Below are positions 34,217 to 62,165 of a stretch of 64,000 bases of DNA, piece by piece. The notes beneath the pieces are model-generated. The model searched no databases, had not been told where the DNA came from, and saw only the letters and a list, made by a program, of their open reading frames with translations. Position 1 is the first letter of the stretch; each line of letters begins with the position of its first letter. The stretch lies in contig NC_069005.1 of the NCBI RefSeq assembly GCF_001194135.2, positions 31,520,953-31,584,952 of the forward strand, given 5' to 3'. Both the position numbers and the translations under genes were made by a program. The DNA comes from Octopus bimaculoides (Eukaryota).

Positions 34217-35788
34217 TCATAATAAGGATTTTCTAGAAAACCGATCCAATCGGAAATGGCTCATGTCATATGAAGGTCTTTTGTTCATGACCATTTCTCC
34301 AAGAATTTTCCCTGTCACTGGTGCCAGCTTAAAACCATGTCCTGCAAATTTAGAGAAAAAGAAAATAAACCTTCCTTGAATGTACATTTTGTTAGTGTGT
34401 GTGTGTGTGTGTGTATACAAGGGGGTGCTGAAAAGTTTCTGGCTTTGGGTAAAAGAAAATACAGGAGGATCAGTTAATTTTGATTTTATTAGCTGCCAAT
34501 GACCAATTAATATTTGAAGGATCAGTATTTACAAGATCCATATAATTTTTAAGATCTGCTGTAAGAACTTATAGAACTATCAAACCCACATCCAAAAGGA
34601 AAATATGTTTATAAGAAAGTTGAGAAGAAAGTTTACCTGAAAATCCAGCACCCAAAATAAGGTTAGGGAACTTTGGATGCCTGTCCAAAACAAATTGTTC
34701 ATCTGGGGTCATCTAGAAATAAGAAAATGTCAAATTTTATATGTGCAAGTTCTTGTATTCCTTTATTTAACAACCATGTTTTTCCGTGTTCGTATGGGTT
34801 TGAACTGGGATGTAATTGAGACAGGATTATTTTGCAGTCAGATGCTCTTCTTATCACTTACTCTCATTTTTCAAGCAAAGGATTTTATTTATAAATCCAC
34901 AGGTTTTCAGAAGTGCAGAACAATCAGTCACAACATCTATAAGGAATGTAAACATCATGTCACCTTTTCACCCAAATGAAGCTCTGGGATGTAAACTTCC
35001 TTTCACATTCAAACTCAAATACACACACCAAACAAAAACCGAAAGTTTTAATTACCGTGTAAATACATGTTTCTATAATACTTGGATGCAGTTCCAATCC
35101 TGGAAATATGTCTTTGACAAGTTGCTCACATTTTTCAATTGTATACCTGGAGTCAACCTGATCTCGTTTGTTTGGGTCGATTTCAGGACCATGGTGCAAA
35201 AACAACTGCAGAAATCAATGTGTGTATACATATAATATTTGTCAACATGTATATATATATATAACACTATCAACAGATATATATGTGTGTGTATGCATTC
35301 TACCTCCCACACACAGCCCCTCGTTCCCGATCACCGTTTGTTATCTCCCCCTTTCTTAGCTCTCCTGAAATAAGAATTTCTAACTTCCGGTCAGTCATTG
35401 TTATGATCGGCCATTATTATGATTGACCGTTGACTGAACACTATTCAATTTTTTTTCTCCGTGTTTTTCTCCTTGTCTCCGTATTCTTTCTGTTGAAGAG
35501 CGTAGCTCGAAACGTCAAAGACTTTCCGTACTCCCGAGCGTCATACTAATATATACTTTTGTTATTTACACCACCTGTCCTCGCCTGTTGTTATTATTTG
35601 TATATTCTCCCATATATATATATATATATATATATGNNNNNNNNNNTCATACTAATATATACTTTTGTTATTTACACCACCTGTCCTCGTCTGTTGTTAT
35701 TATTTGTATATTCTCCCATATATATATATATATATGACACTATCAACAGATATATGTCCACATACATGAGTATGTATGTGGGTGGGTG

Positions 35789-35820
<32 letters not shown>

Positions 35821-36685
35821 TATGTGTTGAAGGAAAATGTAGTATAGAGGAATGTCAAAGAAATTGACAAGAAAAATGAGAAAGAACAGTACAATCAAAC
35901 GCTAACAAGTTCAACCCTTCATCAGTTGTCAACCAAATATCATCATAATTTCAACACCTTTTGATAACATTCAGTTTGTCGGTGTCAGCAATACGGAAGC
36001 TGCTGTGATATAGGCAAATAGCAGAATCAATAACAGATTAATGCAGTTTGAACTTTACTCCTTTTGACTTTAACCCATTGATTGACATTACAGGTTAAGT
36101 GTAAGAAGCGGGATCTAACTGAATTGAATATAGAATAGAATATTTAGGCCGGATATGATCAGATTAAATGCTAAATGATTAAGGGTGACACTTTTATTGG
36201 GGATGGCACTTTCAGGTCTGCTGTATAAGCCTTGGGGTTCCAGAGTTGGAAGGTGGGCAGCAAAGTCAAGGGTTGCTCCATGCAGCACACAGTCAAGCTG
36301 TGTTGCTGTCTGCAAATCATGATCAGTCATTCAATTGACCATCTGCATGCTATAGGTTTGTTCAATCAGAGTTGATTGACCTGGGGTTATACAACAAGAT
36401 AAGCAAAAGAGGAGTTGCAGTTGTGGAGGGTAGAAAGATAAGGAGGAAATATTTCCTCATTAATATGGTCTCTTACCTTTAGCATTCCAGGATATTCTTC
36501 TGCTGGAAGTCCATAGAACTCATCAATACCATTCCCATAATAAAATGCTGGGAAATTGTTCTTAAGTTCATATTGTCCTGGCACCTTCGATTTAAAATAT
36601 CCAACACTGATCTTCATTGGCTGTGAAGAGAAAAGACAATCCACTCAAAATACAAGGACCAATTTTGTATGCATGTATATATGTG

Positions 36686-36720
<35 letters not shown>

Positions 36721-39700
36721 GGATTGAAACAATAATAAATTTGGCAATTCTGTGTGAACACTAACCTTCAGAGGAAAATCAATTCCTAATTGGTTGAAAA
36801 ATATTTTGGCCCACGATCCTTGGCACAAGACAACATTTCGAGACTGGAACATTCCTTTGGTTGTATGCAGCTTAATAATCTCCCCTGGTTCCACAGATAA
36901 TACGGGGGTTCCATCAATGATTTTGCCACCAAGCTTCTTGAACTGATTCTGGAGAAATACAATAATGATAGTTCTGATAAAGAATTCACTGAAAACTATG
37001 TAACAAGTTTGGATTGGAGAAGGTATGAACATGAGTCAAAGGGTGTATGAGAAAATGGCAACAAGGAGCAAAGATGCTTTGGAATTTCAAGATCCAATAT
37101 GATCAGAAGTCCAATATGGTGCTGGTTGACAAGGGAGAAAAATCATACCGAATCATAGATATCCCATGTCCTAGGGACAGTAGAATCCTCAAAAAATGAT
37201 GAGATATGAAGCAATGAAAAGAGAAATCAAAAAGCTATGGTCAATAAAAAACGTGTATATTATGATAATAACTGTCCATGCCCTAAGTATAGTGAGCAAT
37301 GAAATTGAGAGGTGATTGGCTAAAGATAGGCATAAAAGGTTATATGCATATATATGTGTGTGTGTGTGTGTATATACAACACACAAAGTAACATTGTCAG
37401 CTGTATGCAATTTAAAACCAAATTGTGACTGAGGGCACTGGGTAGCATCTATAATGCTAGAAATAAGAATTAAAACCCTTAGAGTTGCAAGGAAGCACAT
37501 TTTGATATGCTGAGAGGGGAGATAACCACTCCATAAGTGAAGCTAGATCACTGGCAAAGACTAATTTTACCTGTAAGATTACAGGCCCATCAGCGGTGAC
37601 CACCTCATTGCCAAAGGGTTTGGCTAAATCCAGGCTGTCTATATATATTTACCATATGAATTTAGCAAAATGCTAATGTGAAAATTACAAGATAACACAG
37701 GTAGCTAAACGCAATATAAGACCAAAATGGAAAAGCTCAATTGTCATTAATTGTGACTGAAGTTGCTGGGTTGCACCTTTGTGTGTCTGAATAGAACGCT
37801 TGAAGGCAAGTAGAAACTGGTCTACACCTGTGCAAATGTAGAGTTAAAATACAGAAGAAAATAAAAATGGGAAATATGTTCGAGCAGTATTTTTGGGATC
37901 TTACCTGGAACGTCATCAGTGCTTGGTCTGCTCGCAGAATTCCTCCTTCAGGTTCAATGAGTGCTTTGGAACCTGCTGGAACTTTTATGTTGAATTCCTT
38001 GAGCAAACGGTCAGCTGGCACATCTTTAAAGGTCATTTTCTTGTCAATTAGGACCCTTTTCACTGTGTCCATGTAACTGCTCTGCGGGGTGGACATGACA
38101 AGTAGCTGGCTCTTCCTGAAAAAAGTATTTCAGTGTTATTGTTGCTGTTGTTGTTGTTGTGCTGGTCAAACTAACAGATGAGATCTGTATATGCGTGTGG
38201 CTAAGGTGTTGCATTCACGATCCTAAGATTGCAGTTTCGATACTTGGATTGGGCGATGCATTGTGTTCTTGATCAAGAGGCTTCATTTTATGTTCCTCCA
38301 GTTTGCTCAGCTGGCCAAAAAGGAATAATCCTGCAACAGACCATCTTCCTGTCCAGGGTGAATTCGGGTGAATATATGCTCCACAGAATTTGGGAAACTG
38401 GTCGTATGAGCCCATGTCTCAGGAAGGACCTTTGAACCTTTTGATGTGTGCAGCCTCGTGGTTGGTTAGGGTGTTGGACTCATGATCGTAAGATTGTGGT
38501 TTCAATTCCTGGACCACACAATTTGTTGTGTTCTTGAATGAAACACTTCATTTCATGTTTCTCCAGTCCACTCAGGTGGCAAACATGAGTAATTTTGCCA
38601 CAGACCAGCATCCCATCCTGCAGGATGATATGGTCAAAGTCGAATCACCAGGAAGGCCTACTTCCTACAAGACTTTATCTACATATATACTTAATTAGTG
38701 AGAAATGATCGTTGAGTTCAGGTGTTCACCTCAGACAATACTCACATGTACAACGGTTTTCTGAATTTGGATGATAGAAAGATATGGTGTGTGTGTGGTC
38801 GGAAGGAGATTAGTTGGTCAGCAAAAGATACAAAAAAAAAAAGGAACAAATAGTGAACTTACTTGTAGAGTTGAGTCTCAGAATCTCGTTCCAGTTGTGC
38901 CCACATGGGATAAGCTTCCTTCATCATCTCAGCAAAGATTTCCTGGAAGTAGGCCTTCCTGGTGATTCGACTTTGACCATGGGAACTTCCTCTGCTGTGT
39001 GGCAGTGGGAACTGGATTAAACGAGAGAAACCAATATATCATCGTCATCGTCAGCATTGTCATCATTTTGCATCTGTTTTCTATACATACATAAACAAAA
39101 GCATGTATACAAATGTATATAGATATATACATAAATAAATAACAACAAATGGATAATGTGTCAATTCACTGCAGCTGTTCCCATTTTTAATCAGTTTTTA
39201 ATTGATTAATTGGGGATATTACACCATTAGAAAAAAAGAAAACGTTTTCATCCGGTGACTACACGAACCACAACATTCAAAAACATTCAAAAGCCAACAG
39301 CATGTACACCTTCATGATTCTATGGCCTTTGCTGGTCAAAGAATGAAATTGTAAGTTCAGTATGAAAGTATTATAGGAGAAAAAAATGTGAGTCATTTGT
39401 AGGTAGAAGGGTTAGAGGGTGGGGTAGGGGGATCAGATAGTGAAACACCTCGTCCCCTACAACAAAGATAAAGTTACTTTTATCTTTCAATTCTATTCAA
39501 CAAGCGGTGTTAGGGCTAAGTAGGATTTGGTAGGCGGAAACTGAAAGAAGCCCGTCGTATATATATATATATATATATATGTTTGTGTGTCTGTGTTTAT
39601 CCCCACCCCACCAACATCGCTTAACAACCAATGTTGGTGTGTTTATGTCCCTGTAACATAGCAGTTCGGCAAAAGAGACCGATAGAATATATATATATAT

Positions 39701-61531: not shown

Positions 61532-61574
<43 letters not shown>

Positions 61575-61655
61575 TAACAATGTGTAATAAACCAGTCAAA
61601 TCGCCCTCAAATCACACCTTACCCTAATCCCTAATTCTTCATTTATTATATGCTG

Positions 61656-61735
<80 letters not shown>

Positions 61736-62165
61736 AGGGAGAGAGTAAGAGAGAGAGGATTAAAATGAACGAAAGCAACGAGAGAAAAATAAGAGAGAGA
61801 AGAAAATGGTATGAAACTAGTAAAATTAATGCACAAACATTAATTAAGGCAAAAGAAATTAAGATTAACAAAAGCAGAAAGCCATCTGCACACAGACACA
61901 TGCACACACTCATGCACACAAACGCACACATATACACACCCATTCATGTCCATTATATGCTGCTTAACAAATACATTCACAGTAACATTGAACACAAAAT
62001 TATGAAATTTATCAAATATAAAAGCAGGAATACAAAATATTTCATTGAAAGTTATTCTACCTGTTCCAATAATAAAGTTCTGTAACCATTTTTCTGTAAG
62101 TAGTGGGCGGTAGAAGAGCCATTTATACCAGCTCCAACAACTATAGCATCGTACACGGCAGCCAT
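56597..62165 (-). CDS. PIPOX: PIPOX-like flavoprotein oxidase, paralog C, 8 exons, 380 aa
   Basis: Exons: 62165-62061, 61514-61366, 61043-60833, 60145-59963, 59390-59247, 58608-58459, 57255-57180, 56721-56597. The structure is the same and the frame is intact. Motifs: [51 protein letters not shown]. Confidence 0.93.
58819..58915 (+). mobile_element. Mariner transposase N-terminal fragment, truncated by a SINE insertion (PIPOX-C intron 5)
   Basis: Translates as [32 protein letters not shown], the mariner HTH start, and then switches abruptly into a SINE head. Confidence 0.7.
58929..59151 (+). mobile_element. Abundant SINE family 1 (head gctggcagaa.cgttagcacgccgggcgaaatgcttag); further copies at about 510-700(-), 735-925(-), 5260-5470(-), 5480-5700(-), 8890-9100(+), 18865-19075(+), 51010-51175(-), 51186-51300(+), 56860-57060(-)
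   Basis: The core gttctgagttcaaattccgc.gaggtc.actttgcctttcatcctttcggggtcgat..aataagtaccag is repeated on both strands. Confidence 0.85.

What the first reader, a model, noticed from the sequence alone, without database searches (positions are those of the whole stretch)
34217..62165. Tandem triplication of intact PIPOX (sarcosine/pipecolate oxidase) genes: a lineage-specific amino-acid oxidase cluster
Seen: three head-to-tail 8-exon genes have identical exon lengths and phases and intact 380-aa frames. All keep the GAG Rossmann motif, the covalent-FAD Cys (CxYT), the oxygen-activating Lys at the end of exon 5, the following active-site His, and GHG[F/Y]K. A is strongly diverged from B/C (exon 3: 37/70 identical A vs B), while B and C are a younger pair. 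Established: PIPOX is single-copy in human; the MSOX/PIPOX family oxidises secondary amino acids (sarcosine, L-pipecolate, L-proline) and releases H2O2. Cephalopods use proline as a fuel, hold much betaine, and make the secondary-amine opine octopine. Inference: retained paralogs with new substrate ranges, for example proline, N-methyl amino acids or opines, or H2O2 production for defence. More copies may lie beyond the right edge.
Basis: partly seen in the sequence, partly recalled or inferred. Interest (0 to 1): 0.78.

Follow-up and report, generated by a model that had tools for sequence, protein, structure and literature searches.

The report
Three tandem octopus sarcosine-oxidase (PIPOX) genes
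The window holds three real, intact, neighbouring copies of an ordinary flavin enzyme gene (PIPOX, sarcosine/pipecolate oxidase) from Octopus bimaculoides. All three are already in public gene catalogues, and similar tandem copies occur in other molluscs, so this is a solid but fairly ordinary gene-family expansion.

Summary
Observation confirmed. On the minus strand lie three head-to-tail genes: A (34217-40701), B (45536-52908) and C (56597-62165). Each has 8 coding exons of identical length, all introns are GT-AG, and each frame is an uninterrupted 380 aa. No exon touches an assembly gap. Gapless Octopus sinensis loci show the same three genes, exon lengths and order.

All three are full-length members of the sarcosine oxidase (MSOX)/PIPOX flavoenzyme family with every catalytic residue kept. 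They are not haplotypes: B and C differ at 11% of coding bases. Orthologues of A, B and C exist in O. sinensis; B and C proteins are also annotated in O. vulgaris, where A was seen only as a truncated model. Each O. bimaculoides/O. sinensis orthologue pair evolves under purifying selection (dN/dS 0.21-0.36).

The A versus B/C split predates the Argonauta-Octopus divergence. The B/C split is younger but predates the O. bimaculoides-O. sinensis split. No fourth copy was found.

The window is O. bimaculoides, and the genes are already annotated in RefSeq as peroxisomal sarcosine oxidase(-like). Tandem PIPOX arrays also occur in a scallop and a gastropod.

New here:
- a ~230-nt gene-conversion tract (exon 1 plus the start of intron 1) keeps the paralogues nearly identical within each lineage;
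- patchy B/C conversion in other exons;
- a predicted C-to-B read-through isoform;
- a non-canonical C-terminus (-SLL).

The proposed new substrates or defence role remain untested.

The parts
34217..40701 (-). Gene A (PIPOX paralogue; identical to RefSeq XP_014786226.1), 8 coding exons, 380 aa
   Evidence: Exons 40597-40701, 38863-39011, 37905-38115, 36766-36948, 36477-36620, 35056-35205, 34637-34712 and 34217-34341 (includes the stop). All introns GT-AG and no N in any exon. 100% identical to P0001, 'peroxisomal sarcosine oxidase isoform X1 [Octopus bimaculoides]'. Pfam DAO E=5.6e-46. MSOX 1zov E=7e-56.
45536..52908 (-). Gene B (PIPOX paralogue; identical to XP_052832538.1 / A0A0L8FWM4), 8 coding exons, 380 aa; the most derived copy
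   Evidence: Exons 52804-52908, 50103-50251, 49359-49569, 48768-48950, 48286-48429, 47412-47561, 46385-46460 and 45536-45660. The exact sequence is in the collection as P0121. Pfam DAO E=2e-45. B-specific changes (Ile50 to Gly, PEGG to LEAG, FYGLP to FYGIF, YPGL to YPAL) are shared with the O. sinensis B orthologue. dN/dS against O. sinensis B is 0.21.
56597..62165 (-). Gene C (PIPOX paralogue; identical to A0A0L8FWL1 / XP_014786239.2 apart from 5 extra N-terminal residues in the RefSeq model), 8 coding exons, 380 aa
   Evidence: Exons 62061-62165, 61366-61514, 60833-61043, 59963-60145, 59247-59390, 58459-58608, 57180-57255 and 56597-56721. The exact sequence is P0125. Pfam DAO E=1.2e-47. dN/dS against O. 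sinensis C is 0.23. The RefSeq model starts about 3 kb further upstream, beyond the window's right edge.
40471..40702 (-). Gene-conversion tract in A: exon 1 plus about 127 nt of intron 1
   Evidence: Local alignment gives 95-96% identity to B and C over 232 nt, against 69% identity in the rest of the CDS. P=2e-13 for 102/105 exon matches.
52672..52961 (-). Gene-conversion tract in B: about 53 nt of 5' flank, exon 1 and the start of intron 1
   Evidence: 98.2% identical to C over 285 nt and 95% identical to A over 232 nt. Exon 1 is 105/105 identical to C.
61934..62218 (-). Gene-conversion tract in C
   Evidence: The alignment of eight octopod copies shows paralogues identical within Octopus and within Argonauta but different between the two lineages.
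52921..56600 (-). Intron of the predicted C-to-B read-through isoform
   Evidence: XP_014786240.1 (P0004) ends ...[16 protein letters not shown]. This equals the last exon of C cut at TT|GTAATT (donor GT at 56600-56599), joined to the acceptor AG at 52922-52921 just upstream of the ATG of B and read in frame +1. O. sinensis XP_029651313.2 has the equivalent model. This is a Gnomon prediction, and no reads were seen here.
50770..50793 (-). Alternative 24-nt mini-exon in intron 1 of B (MSRKDPKQ)
   Evidence: Present in RefSeq isoform P0124 (388 aa). Flanked by AG and GT in the window. O. sinensis P0005 has VSRKGPKQ at the same place.

Best explanation
This is a tandem array of three functional paralogues of the animal PIPOX gene (peroxisomal sarcosine / L-pipecolate oxidase; MSOX family, Pfam DAO) in Octopus bimaculoides. 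It lies next to, and converges on, the NVL gene.

Origin. Two unequal-crossover-type duplications within the octopod lineage produced the array. The first, A versus the B/C ancestor, happened before Argonauta and Octopus split. The second, B versus C, happened later but before O. bimaculoides and O. sinensis split.

Enzyme (inferred from sequence). Each gene encodes a 380-aa two-domain flavoenzyme. It is expected to bind FAD covalently through the Cys315-equivalent and to anchor the substrate carboxylate with the Arg52, Tyr55 and Lys348 equivalents. It should oxidise the C-N bond of a small secondary (N-methyl or cyclic) amino acid and reoxidise the flavin with O2 through the Lys265-equivalent, releasing H2O2.

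Selection. All three copies are kept by purifying selection.

Likely differences between copies (inference, not shown). They probably differ modestly in substrate preference and/or expression: pocket position 245 is Tyr in A and B and Leu in C, the exon-5 loop is divergent, and B has lineage-specific replacements.

Concerted evolution. A short tract covering exon 1 (the Rossmann beta-alpha-beta motif) and the first ~130-150 nt of intron 1 is repeatedly homogenised among the copies by gene conversion. Patchy conversion between B and C also affects other exons.
For: - Gene models and gaps.
- Family: full-length Pfam DAO E~1e-46; MSOX structures E 1e-53 to 1e-56 over residues 4-381; best named hits are PIPOX from molluscs to human at 44-52% identity.
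- Residues: G10/G12/G15, H45, R49, R52, Y55, Y254, K265, H269, C315, Y317 and K348 are conserved in A, B and C and their orthologues. Residue roles are taken from PMC12582975 and PMC5459902.
- Not an artefact: B-C dS is 0.22. A, B and C orthologues lie in the order C-B-A-NVL in gapless O. sinensis, with the same exon lengths. O. vulgaris B and C proteins are annotated.
- Timing: NJ tree with 200 bootstraps gives octopod clade 100, A-type 100, BC-type including Argonauta_2 100, B 100, C 92. Argonauta has two tandem copies.
- Selection: orthologue dN/dS is 0.36 (A), 0.21 (B) and 0.23 (C), each significantly below 1.
- Conversion: exon 1 plus the start of its intron is 95-100% identical among paralogues within Octopus and 99% within Argonauta, but about 75% between the two lineages. 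B-C dS ranges from 0 (exon 1) and 0.07 (exon 6) to 0.49 (exon 5). Exon 6 of O. bimaculoides B and C is as similar as orthologues are.
Against: - No expression, activity or localisation data were available here. Transcription rests on RefSeq Gnomon models only, and no Logan transcript contig carries these exact proteins.
- The C-terminus -SLL does not fit the canonical PTS1 consensus, so peroxisomal targeting is unproven.
- There is no signal of positive selection: every exon has dN/dS below 1.
- The exon-5 loop is variable in all taxa, so its divergence is not specific evidence for new substrates.
- The excess of replacements in B is significant with only one species/outgroup combination (25 vs 9, p=0.006; other combinations were not significant).
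- The tree is neighbour-joining only.
Confidence: 0.85

Rival explanations
1. The three copies are functionally redundant and retained for dosage. They would have the same substrates (sarcosine/pipecolate), with no neo- or subfunctionalisation.
For: All catalytic and carboxylate-binding residues are identical. No exon has dN/dS above 1. Ongoing gene conversion shows the copies still exchange sequence. Tandem PIPOX copies recur in other molluscs.
Against: A and B/C have coexisted since before the Argonauta split, with only 66-68% identity, yet each is under purifying selection. Pocket residue 245 differs: Tyr in A and B, Leu in C. B carries replacements at otherwise near-invariant positions, and these are conserved in O. 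sinensis B. Conversion has been confined mostly to exon 1 between A and B/C.
Confidence: 0.3
2. The copies have acquired cephalopod-specific substrates or roles: proline as a fuel, opines such as octopine, or H2O2 generation for defence.
For: There are differences in the substrate-pocket position and the exon-5 loop. dN/dS is relaxed between B and C at 0.41. The C-terminus is non-canonical, which could mean a different compartment.
Against: - There is no signal peptide; the N-terminus is the Rossmann strand itself. This argues against a secreted defence enzyme.
- Tyr254, which sterically limits cyclic imino acids in MSOX (PMC12582975), is retained in all three. A and B add a further aromatic residue at position 245. 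By inference the pocket is if anything smaller, a poor fit for bulky opines.
- The same kind of expansion occurs in bivalves and gastropods, so a cephalopod-specific rationale is not needed.
Confidence: 0.1
3. B and C (or all three) are an assembly artefact: uncollapsed haplotypes or mis-scaffolded contigs in a gap-rich assembly.
For: The window has 16 N-runs, many of them inside the cluster. Exon 1 is identical in B and C.
Against: B and C differ at 11% of coding bases, with dS 0.22. Distinct B and C orthologues are arranged in the same order in the gapless O. sinensis assembly, and B and C proteins are also annotated in O. vulgaris. Exon order 1-8 is consistent across every gap.
Confidence: 0.01
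4. One of the copies, most plausibly B, is a decaying or non-functional duplicate.
For: B has changes at otherwise conserved motifs (Pro to Phe in FYGLP, Gly to Ala in YPGL, Ile50 to Gly) and a longer branch.
Against: The frame and splice sites are intact. The same B-specific residues are kept in O. sinensis, with dN/dS 0.21 and p=6e-11 against neutrality. All catalytic residues are kept.
Confidence: 0.04

Closest known systems
Vertebrate PIPOX (peroxisomal sarcosine oxidase / L-pipecolate oxidase; e.g. human Q8N6Z6-type sequence P0119)
   Same: Same family and probable orthology group: 44-46% identity over about 98% of the length. All active-site residues are shared and the length is similar. 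Position 245 is Leu, as in octopus C.
   Different: It is single-copy in human (established knowledge) and ends in the canonical PTS1 -AHL, whereas the octopus copies end -SLL. Octopus has three tandem copies with partial concerted evolution.
Bacillus monomeric sarcosine oxidase (MSOX; PDB 1EL5, 1ZOV)
   Same: It aligns over its full length (residues 4-381, E~1e-53 to 1e-56). The following are conserved: Cys315 (covalent FAD), Lys265, His269, Arg49, His45, Arg52, Tyr55, Tyr254 and Lys348 (roles).
   Different: It is bacterial. Pocket residues Phe100 and Met245 are replaced by Tyr and by Tyr/Phe/Leu in the octopus proteins. The loop at residues 229-252 is very different.
Tandem PIPOX-like arrays in other molluscs (Ylistrum balloti, Gigantopelta aegis; several copies per chromosome or contig in Pecten maximus and Haliotis)
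   Same: Head-to-tail neighbouring DAO/PIPOX-like genes were verified in Ylistrum and Gigantopelta. Several paralogues per species sit on one chromosome or contig.
   Different: In the NJ tree these duplicates group within their own lineages. The octopod copies form a separate clade with 100% support, so the octopod duplications are independent events.
Exon-restricted gene conversion in tandem paralogues (general phenomenon, recalled from vertebrate globin and opsin clusters)
   Same: A short tract is homogenised among paralogues while the rest diverges. Within the tract, paralogues are closer within a lineage than orthologues are between lineages.
   Different: Here the tract is the first coding exon (the FAD-binding motif) plus the adjacent intron. 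It is seen independently in Octopus and Argonauta. No published description was found in the searched library.

Membership tests
MSOX/PIPOX family of FAD-dependent secondary-amine oxidases (Pfam DAO, PF01266) | Full-length DAO (FAD-dependent oxidoreductase) domain | tested here: met
   PF01266 matches residues 6-356 of all three proteins across profile positions 1-353/353, with E between 5.6e-46 and 1.2e-47.
MSOX/PIPOX family of FAD-dependent secondary-amine oxidases (Pfam DAO, PF01266) | N-terminal GxGxxG beta-alpha-beta dinucleotide-binding motif with an acidic residue at the end of strand 2 | tested here: met
   VVGAGINGS...LLLEQ. G10, G12 and G15 are conserved, and the Asp33 position is Glu, as in all animal PIPOX examined.
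MSOX/PIPOX family of FAD-dependent secondary-amine oxidases (Pfam DAO, PF01266) | Cysteine for the 8-alpha-S-cysteinyl-FAD link (MSOX Cys315) in the C-x-Y-T context | tested here: met
   ETCIYT in A and ESCLYT in B and C align to MSOX Cys315 and Tyr317. The covalent bond itself cannot be tested from sequence.
MSOX/PIPOX family of FAD-dependent secondary-amine oxidases (Pfam DAO, PF01266) | Substrate-carboxylate anchors Arg52, Tyr55 and Lys348, plus His269 and Tyr254 in the active site (residue list from PMC12582975) | tested here: met
   All are conserved in A, B and C and in the O. sinensis and Argonauta orthologues (residue list).
MSOX/PIPOX family of FAD-dependent secondary-amine oxidases (Pfam DAO, PF01266) | Oxygen-activation and flavinylation residues Lys265, Arg49 and His45 | tested here: met
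   All are conserved. Lys265 is the last codon of exon 5 in each gene (roles).
Animal PIPOX (peroxisomal sarcosine oxidase) orthology group | Closest relatives are animal PIPOX and the genes nest inside the mollusc/metazoan PIPOX tree | tested here: met
   The best named hits are 'peroxisomal sarcosine oxidase' from molluscs, amphioxus, echinoderm and vertebrates. The NJ tree, rooted on vertebrate PIPOX, groups the octopod clade with other cephalopod-like sequences and places it among the mollusc PIPOX sequences.
Animal PIPOX (peroxisomal sarcosine oxidase) orthology group | C-terminal PTS1 tripeptide fitting (S/A/C)-(K/R/H)-(L/M) | tested here: not met
   Octopus A, B and C end -SLL, with Leu at position -2. 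Argonauta copies end -SRL, bivalves -AKL or -SKL and human -AHL. A basic Arg-Lys precedes -SLL. No PTS1 predictor or localisation test was available, so the label 'peroxisomal' is unverified for Octopus.
Animal PIPOX (peroxisomal sarcosine oxidase) orthology group | Oxidase activity on sarcosine and L-pipecolate with H2O2 release | not testable with these tools
   This needs recombinant enzyme assays.
Tandem paralogues under concerted evolution (gene conversion) | Within the tract, paralogues of one lineage are more alike than orthologues of different lineages, in contrast with the flanking sequence | tested here: met
   Exon 1: O. bimaculoides A/B/C 97-100%, O. sinensis A/B/C 94-98% and Argonauta 1/2 99%, but Octopus versus Argonauta 74-76%. 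The rest of the CDS is 69% identical between A and B/C.

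The most novel reading that the evidence does not exclude
The three paralogues have partitioned function. For example, A and B, with an extra aromatic pocket residue, might be specialised for sarcosine or other small N-methyl amino acids linked to methylamine-osmolyte breakdown. 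C might be the pipecolate-type enzyme. With -SLL in place of a canonical PTS1, at least part of the activity might have left the peroxisome. Under this reading, the persistent homogenisation of exon 1, together with C-to-B read-through splicing, would reflect co-transcription of the array, in which identical first coding exons make chimeric transcripts harmless.
Probability: 0.15. Interest if true: 0.5.

Novelty: already known. Interest (0 to 1): 0.22.

Why it matters
As it stands this is a clean, well-supported example of a lineage-specific tandem expansion of a housekeeping flavoenzyme. The genes are already in RefSeq and UniProt, so the gain is descriptive:
- the timing of the two duplications within octopods;
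- proof that all copies are under selective constraint;
- a sharply bounded gene-conversion tract over the FAD-binding exon, seen independently in Octopus and Argonauta.

If the paralogues prove to differ in substrate or compartment, they would give a small natural experiment on specificity determinants in the MSOX/PIPOX family, notably position 245 and the exon-5 loop. They would also bear on secondary-amine and osmolyte catabolism in marine molluscs, where PIPOX has expanded repeatedly.

Tried and rejected
I used the database ids P0001, P0126, P0005, P0002 and P0128 instead.
- Four literature searches combining sarcosine oxidase or PIPOX with octopus, cephalopod, mollusc terms or oyster found nothing about this cluster. 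The only hits listed PIPOX as a differentially expressed gene in a scallop and a crab.
- An Rfam scan of the whole window found no RNA family, so the conserved part of intron 1 is not a known RNA.
- I looked for a fourth copy or pseudo-exons by tblastn in the window, in L003, and in the O. sinensis and Argonauta loci, and found none. A weak antisense hit in intron 2 of O. sinensis B is a retrotransposon reverse-transcriptase fragment, not PIPOX.
- Per-exon and sliding-window dN/dS gave no sign of positive selection.
- Automatic extraction of the Argonauta BC-type CDS failed at exon 2. Branch-wise codon analysis with Argonauta as outgroup was therefore not done, and only protein-level relative-rate tests were run.
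- The taxa of the unnamed transcript-derived relatives P0008 and P0010 could not be identified from their run accessions. Whether squids, cuttlefish or Nautilus are single-copy therefore stays open.
- I did not run a structure prediction. The full-length sequence match to solved MSOX structures already settles the fold, and coordinates would not have been available for distance measurements.

Full report
**1. What is in the sequence**

The window has 16 runs of N and 37.5% G+C. Seeding with conserved peptides found exactly three copies of each of eight exon types, all on the minus strand. Explicit models give three genes: A (34217-40701), B (45536-52908) and C (56597-62165).

Each gene has coding exons of 105, 149, 211, 183, 144, 150, 76 and 125 nt with identical phases. 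All 21 introns are GT-AG. Each CDS is 1143 nt and encodes 380 aa without an internal stop. The finding's start and end are exactly the stop codon of A and the ATG of C. In the direction of transcription the order is C, B, A, head to tail.

**2. The gaps**

No exon contains N. All ten gaps between 33138 and 63459 lie in introns or between genes. The closest are 87 nt beyond the stop codon of A and 157 nt upstream of the ATG of B.

Three observations show that no coding exon is hidden in a gap and that the scaffolding is right:
- Each protein is colinear with Bacillus monomeric sarcosine oxidase over residues 4-381.
- Exon order 1-8 holds across every gap.
- Gapless O. sinensis loci (L005, L002, L006, with no N) carry orthologues with the same eight exon lengths and GT-AG introns.

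What the gaps do hide is part of the 5' region of B and parts of the intergenic spacers.

**3. Identity of the locus**

Protein A is 100% identical to RefSeq XP_014786226.1, 'peroxisomal sarcosine oxidase isoform X1 [Octopus bimaculoides]'. The window corresponds to chromosome CM046625.1 of GCA_001194135.2, at about 31.5-31.6 Mb.

B and C are also present as exact sequences in public collections: B as XP_052832538.1 / A0A0L8FWM4, and C as A0A0L8FWL1 / XP_014786239.2. The three genes are therefore already annotated. I found no paper in the searchable library that links sarcosine oxidase or PIPOX with octopus or cephalopods.

**4. Family membership**

All three proteins match Pfam DAO end to end, with E~1e-46. 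They also match solved MSOX structures (1ZOV, 1EL5) with E between 1e-53 and 1e-56, then N-methyltryptophan oxidase, and more distantly glycine oxidase, NikD and the fructosyl-amine oxidases.

I mapped the proteins onto MSOX numbering. The residue roles come from PMC12582975 and PMC5459902. The following are conserved in A, B and C and in their O. sinensis and Argonauta relatives:
- the GxGxxG glycines;
- His45, Arg49, Arg52 and Tyr55;
- Tyr254, Lys265, His269 and Cys315;
- Tyr317, Gly344-His345 and Lys348.

Pocket residues differ. Phe100 is Tyr in all cephalopod sequences. Met245 is Tyr in A, Tyr (O. bimaculoides) or Phe (O. sinensis) in B, and Leu in C, as in human PIPOX and most molluscs. 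In the related enzyme MTOX, the position equivalent to Met245 shifts substrate preference.

B alone replaces Ile50 with Gly and alters three otherwise near-invariant motifs: PEGG to LEAG, FYGLP to FYGIF, and YPGL to YPAL. The O. sinensis B orthologue carries the same changes.

**5. Not haplotypes, not pseudogenes**

| Pair | aa identity | nt identity | dS | dN/dS |
|---|---|---|---|---|
| A-B | 66% | 72% | above 1 | 0.23 |
| A-C | 68% | 72% | above 1 | 0.18 |
| B-C | 83% | 89% | 0.22 | 0.41 |

O. sinensis has distinct A, B and C orthologues. O. vulgaris has annotated B and C proteins, plus a truncated 267-aa A-type model. In O. sinensis the genes lie in the order C-B-A-NVL.

dN/dS between O. 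bimaculoides and O. sinensis orthologues is 0.36 for A, 0.21 for B and 0.23 for C. Each is significantly below 1 (p between 5e-4 and 6e-11). All three genes have therefore been under purifying selection since those species split.

**6. Timing and copy number**

A neighbour-joining tree of 39 PIPOX proteins with 200 bootstraps gives these supports:
- octopod clade, 100%;
- A-type (Argonauta_1 plus Octopus A), 100%;
- BC-type (Argonauta_2 plus Octopus B and C), 100%;
- Octopus B, 100%;
- Octopus C, 92%.

Argonauta hians has two tandem copies, with AGTRAP upstream. So A versus B/C duplicated before the Argonauta-Octopus split. B versus C duplicated afterwards, but before O. bimaculoides and O. 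sinensis diverged.

No fourth copy was seen in any of these places:
- the window itself;
- the 13 kb upstream of the first coding exon of C in O. bimaculoides, although about half of that stretch is N;
- the 10 kb upstream of C in gapless O. sinensis.

The expansion is octopod-specific, but the pattern is not unusual for molluscs. Pecten maximus has four PIPOX-like proteins on one chromosome, Ylistrum three on one 131-kb contig, and Haliotis and Gigantopelta two each on one chromosome. Head-to-tail neighbours were verified in Ylistrum and Gigantopelta. In the tree these duplicates are lineage-specific too.

**7.

Exon 1 encodes the same 35 residues in A, B and C. Its DNA is 97% identical between A and B/C and 100% identical between B and C, while the rest of the CDS is 69% identical between A and B/C (P=2e-13).

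The identical block runs from the ATG about 127 nt into intron 1: 232 nt at 95-96% for A versus B or C, and 285 nt at 98% for B versus C. Beyond it the introns cannot be aligned.

The same holds in O. sinensis. In Argonauta the two paralogues are 99% identical across exon 1 and its flanks, although the proteins as a whole are far more diverged. Yet Octopus and Argonauta exon 1 are only 74-76% identical, and the intron parts are unrelated. Paralogues that match within a lineage but not between lineages are the signature of gene conversion, not of sequence constraint. Finding the pattern in two gapless assemblies excludes an assembly artefact.

Between B and C, dS varies from 0 (exon 1) and 0.07 (exon 6) to 0.42-0.49 (exons 3 and 5). 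Exon 6 of O. bimaculoides B and C (95.3%) is as similar as orthologues are. Exon 8 of O. sinensis B is closer to both C sequences (94-95%) than to its own orthologue in O. bimaculoides (93%). This indicates patchy, lineage-specific B/C conversion.

**8. Transcript-level details**

- RefSeq isoform XP_014786240.1 ends ...[16 protein letters not shown]. This is exactly the last exon of C, cut at TT|GTAATT just before the stop, joined to an acceptor (AG at 52922-52921) 12 nt upstream of the ATG of B and read in another frame. O. sinensis has the equivalent model. It is a predicted C-to-B read-through transcript. I could not inspect reads.
- The same acceptor precedes the ATG of C. The RefSeq model of C begins with an exon about 3 kb beyond the right edge of the window.
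- B also has an annotated 24-nt alternative mini-exon at 50770-50793.

**9. Function: what is shown and what is inferred**

Shown from sequence: these are intact, selectively constrained members of the MSOX/PIPOX family with a complete catalytic apparatus.

Inferred: covalent flavinylation, oxidation of small secondary amino acids and H2O2 release.

- A secreted defence oxidase is unlikely, because the proteins begin 4-5 residues before the first Rossmann strand and have no signal peptide.
- Bulky opines fit poorly. Tyr254, which limits even five-membered rings in MSOX, is kept, and A and B add a further aromatic residue at position 245. This is inference only.

Divergence is greatest in exon 5, which carries position 245 and Tyr254. 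That loop is variable in all taxa, however, and dN/dS there is 0.3-0.6, not above 1. B shows an excess of replacements relative to C (25 vs 9, p=0.006, with Argonauta as outgroup), but the excess is not significant in O. sinensis or with A as the outgroup.

The C-terminus of all Octopus copies is -SLL. This departs from the canonical PTS1 at position -2. Argonauta has -SRL, bivalves -AKL or -SKL, and human -AHL. Peroxisomal targeting in Octopus is therefore an open question.

Because PIPOX has expanded repeatedly in marine molluscs, a general role in catabolism of secondary amines or methylamine osmolytes is a more economical guess than a cephalopod-specific one. That is speculation on my part.

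**10. Verdict**

The triplication is real, intact and specific to octopods.
- The idea of further copies beyond the edge is not supported.
- The functional proposals are untested and partly unlikely.
- The genes are already annotated, and the phenomenon is common in molluscs.
- The only added novelty is the exon-1 gene-conversion tract and the patchy B/C conversion. Interest is low to moderate.

Noticed in passing
window 40471-40702, 52672-52961, 61934-62218 (minus strand); also L005/L002/L006 ~10001-10250 and L004 ~9940-10210 and ~35385-35650: Exon 1 plus the first ~130-150 nt of intron 1 is nearly identical among the paralogues within Octopus and within Argonauta, but differs between the two lineages. 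This points to a sharply bounded gene-conversion tract over the FAD-binding exon.
   Followed up: yes
window 56600 (donor) to 52921 (acceptor), minus strand: RefSeq isoform XP_014786240.1, and its O. sinensis counterpart, is a C-to-B read-through. The last exon of C is spliced just before its stop codon onto the acceptor 12 nt upstream of the ATG of B, which adds [12 protein letters not shown]. The end of B carries the same TT|GTAATT donor sequence.
   Followed up: partly
window 34217-34228, 45536-45547, 56597-56608 (C-terminal codons): All three Octopus proteins end -RKSLL, which is not the canonical PTS1 (S/A/C)(K/R/H)(L/M). Argonauta copies end -SRL. Unnamed cephalopod-like transcripts end -ASL, -SAL or -SVL. 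Bivalves end -AKL or -SKL.
   Followed up: partly
window 50770-50793 (minus strand): There is a 24-nt alternative mini-exon (MSRKDPKQ) in intron 1 of B, flanked by AG and GT. It is used in RefSeq isoform P0124, and an equivalent (VSRKGPKQ) exists in O. sinensis.
   Followed up: partly
window ~19646-32329 (plus strand): The NVL gene (nuclear VCP-like: Nucleolin_bd plus two AAA domains) converges tail-to-tail on gene A. Exons are visible at, for example, 24411-24641 and 30050-30200. The same neighbour is present in O. sinensis.
   Followed up: partly
window 10378-11403 and 284-499 (minus strand): These are exons of a zinc carboxypeptidase gene (Pfam Peptidase_M14, E=4e-58 and 1.5e-07), including an unusually long 342-codon open stretch.
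   Followed up: partly
O. bimaculoides versus O. sinensis orthologue comparison of the CDS of A, B and C: Synonymous divergence between the two species is about half as large for A (dS 0.10) as for B and C (0.18-0.19), although the genes are adjacent. This is unexplained. Possible causes are conversion, a local difference in mutation rate, or chance.
   Followed up: no
L007 (SRR29271460 contig), protein P0008: An unnamed transcript-derived PIPOX (57% identical to A) is sister to the whole octopod clade with 96% bootstrap support, and it is separate from the Sepia-like sequences P0009 and P0010. Its taxon could not be identified. It may mark a single-copy relative or an older coleoid paralogue.
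   Followed up: partly
window-wide, e.g. flanks of gaps at 29321, 33138, 42082, 51864 and 53066: Most assembly gaps are bordered by (TA)n or (CA)n microsatellites, which appear as YIYIYI or CVCVCV runs in translation. This suggests the gaps are repeat-induced breaks rather than missing genes.
   Followed up: no
L002 17448-17618 (minus strand): A weak antisense tblastn hit to PIPOX inside intron 2 of O. sinensis B is a non-LTR retrotransposon reverse-transcriptase fragment, not a PIPOX pseudo-exon.
   Followed up: yes
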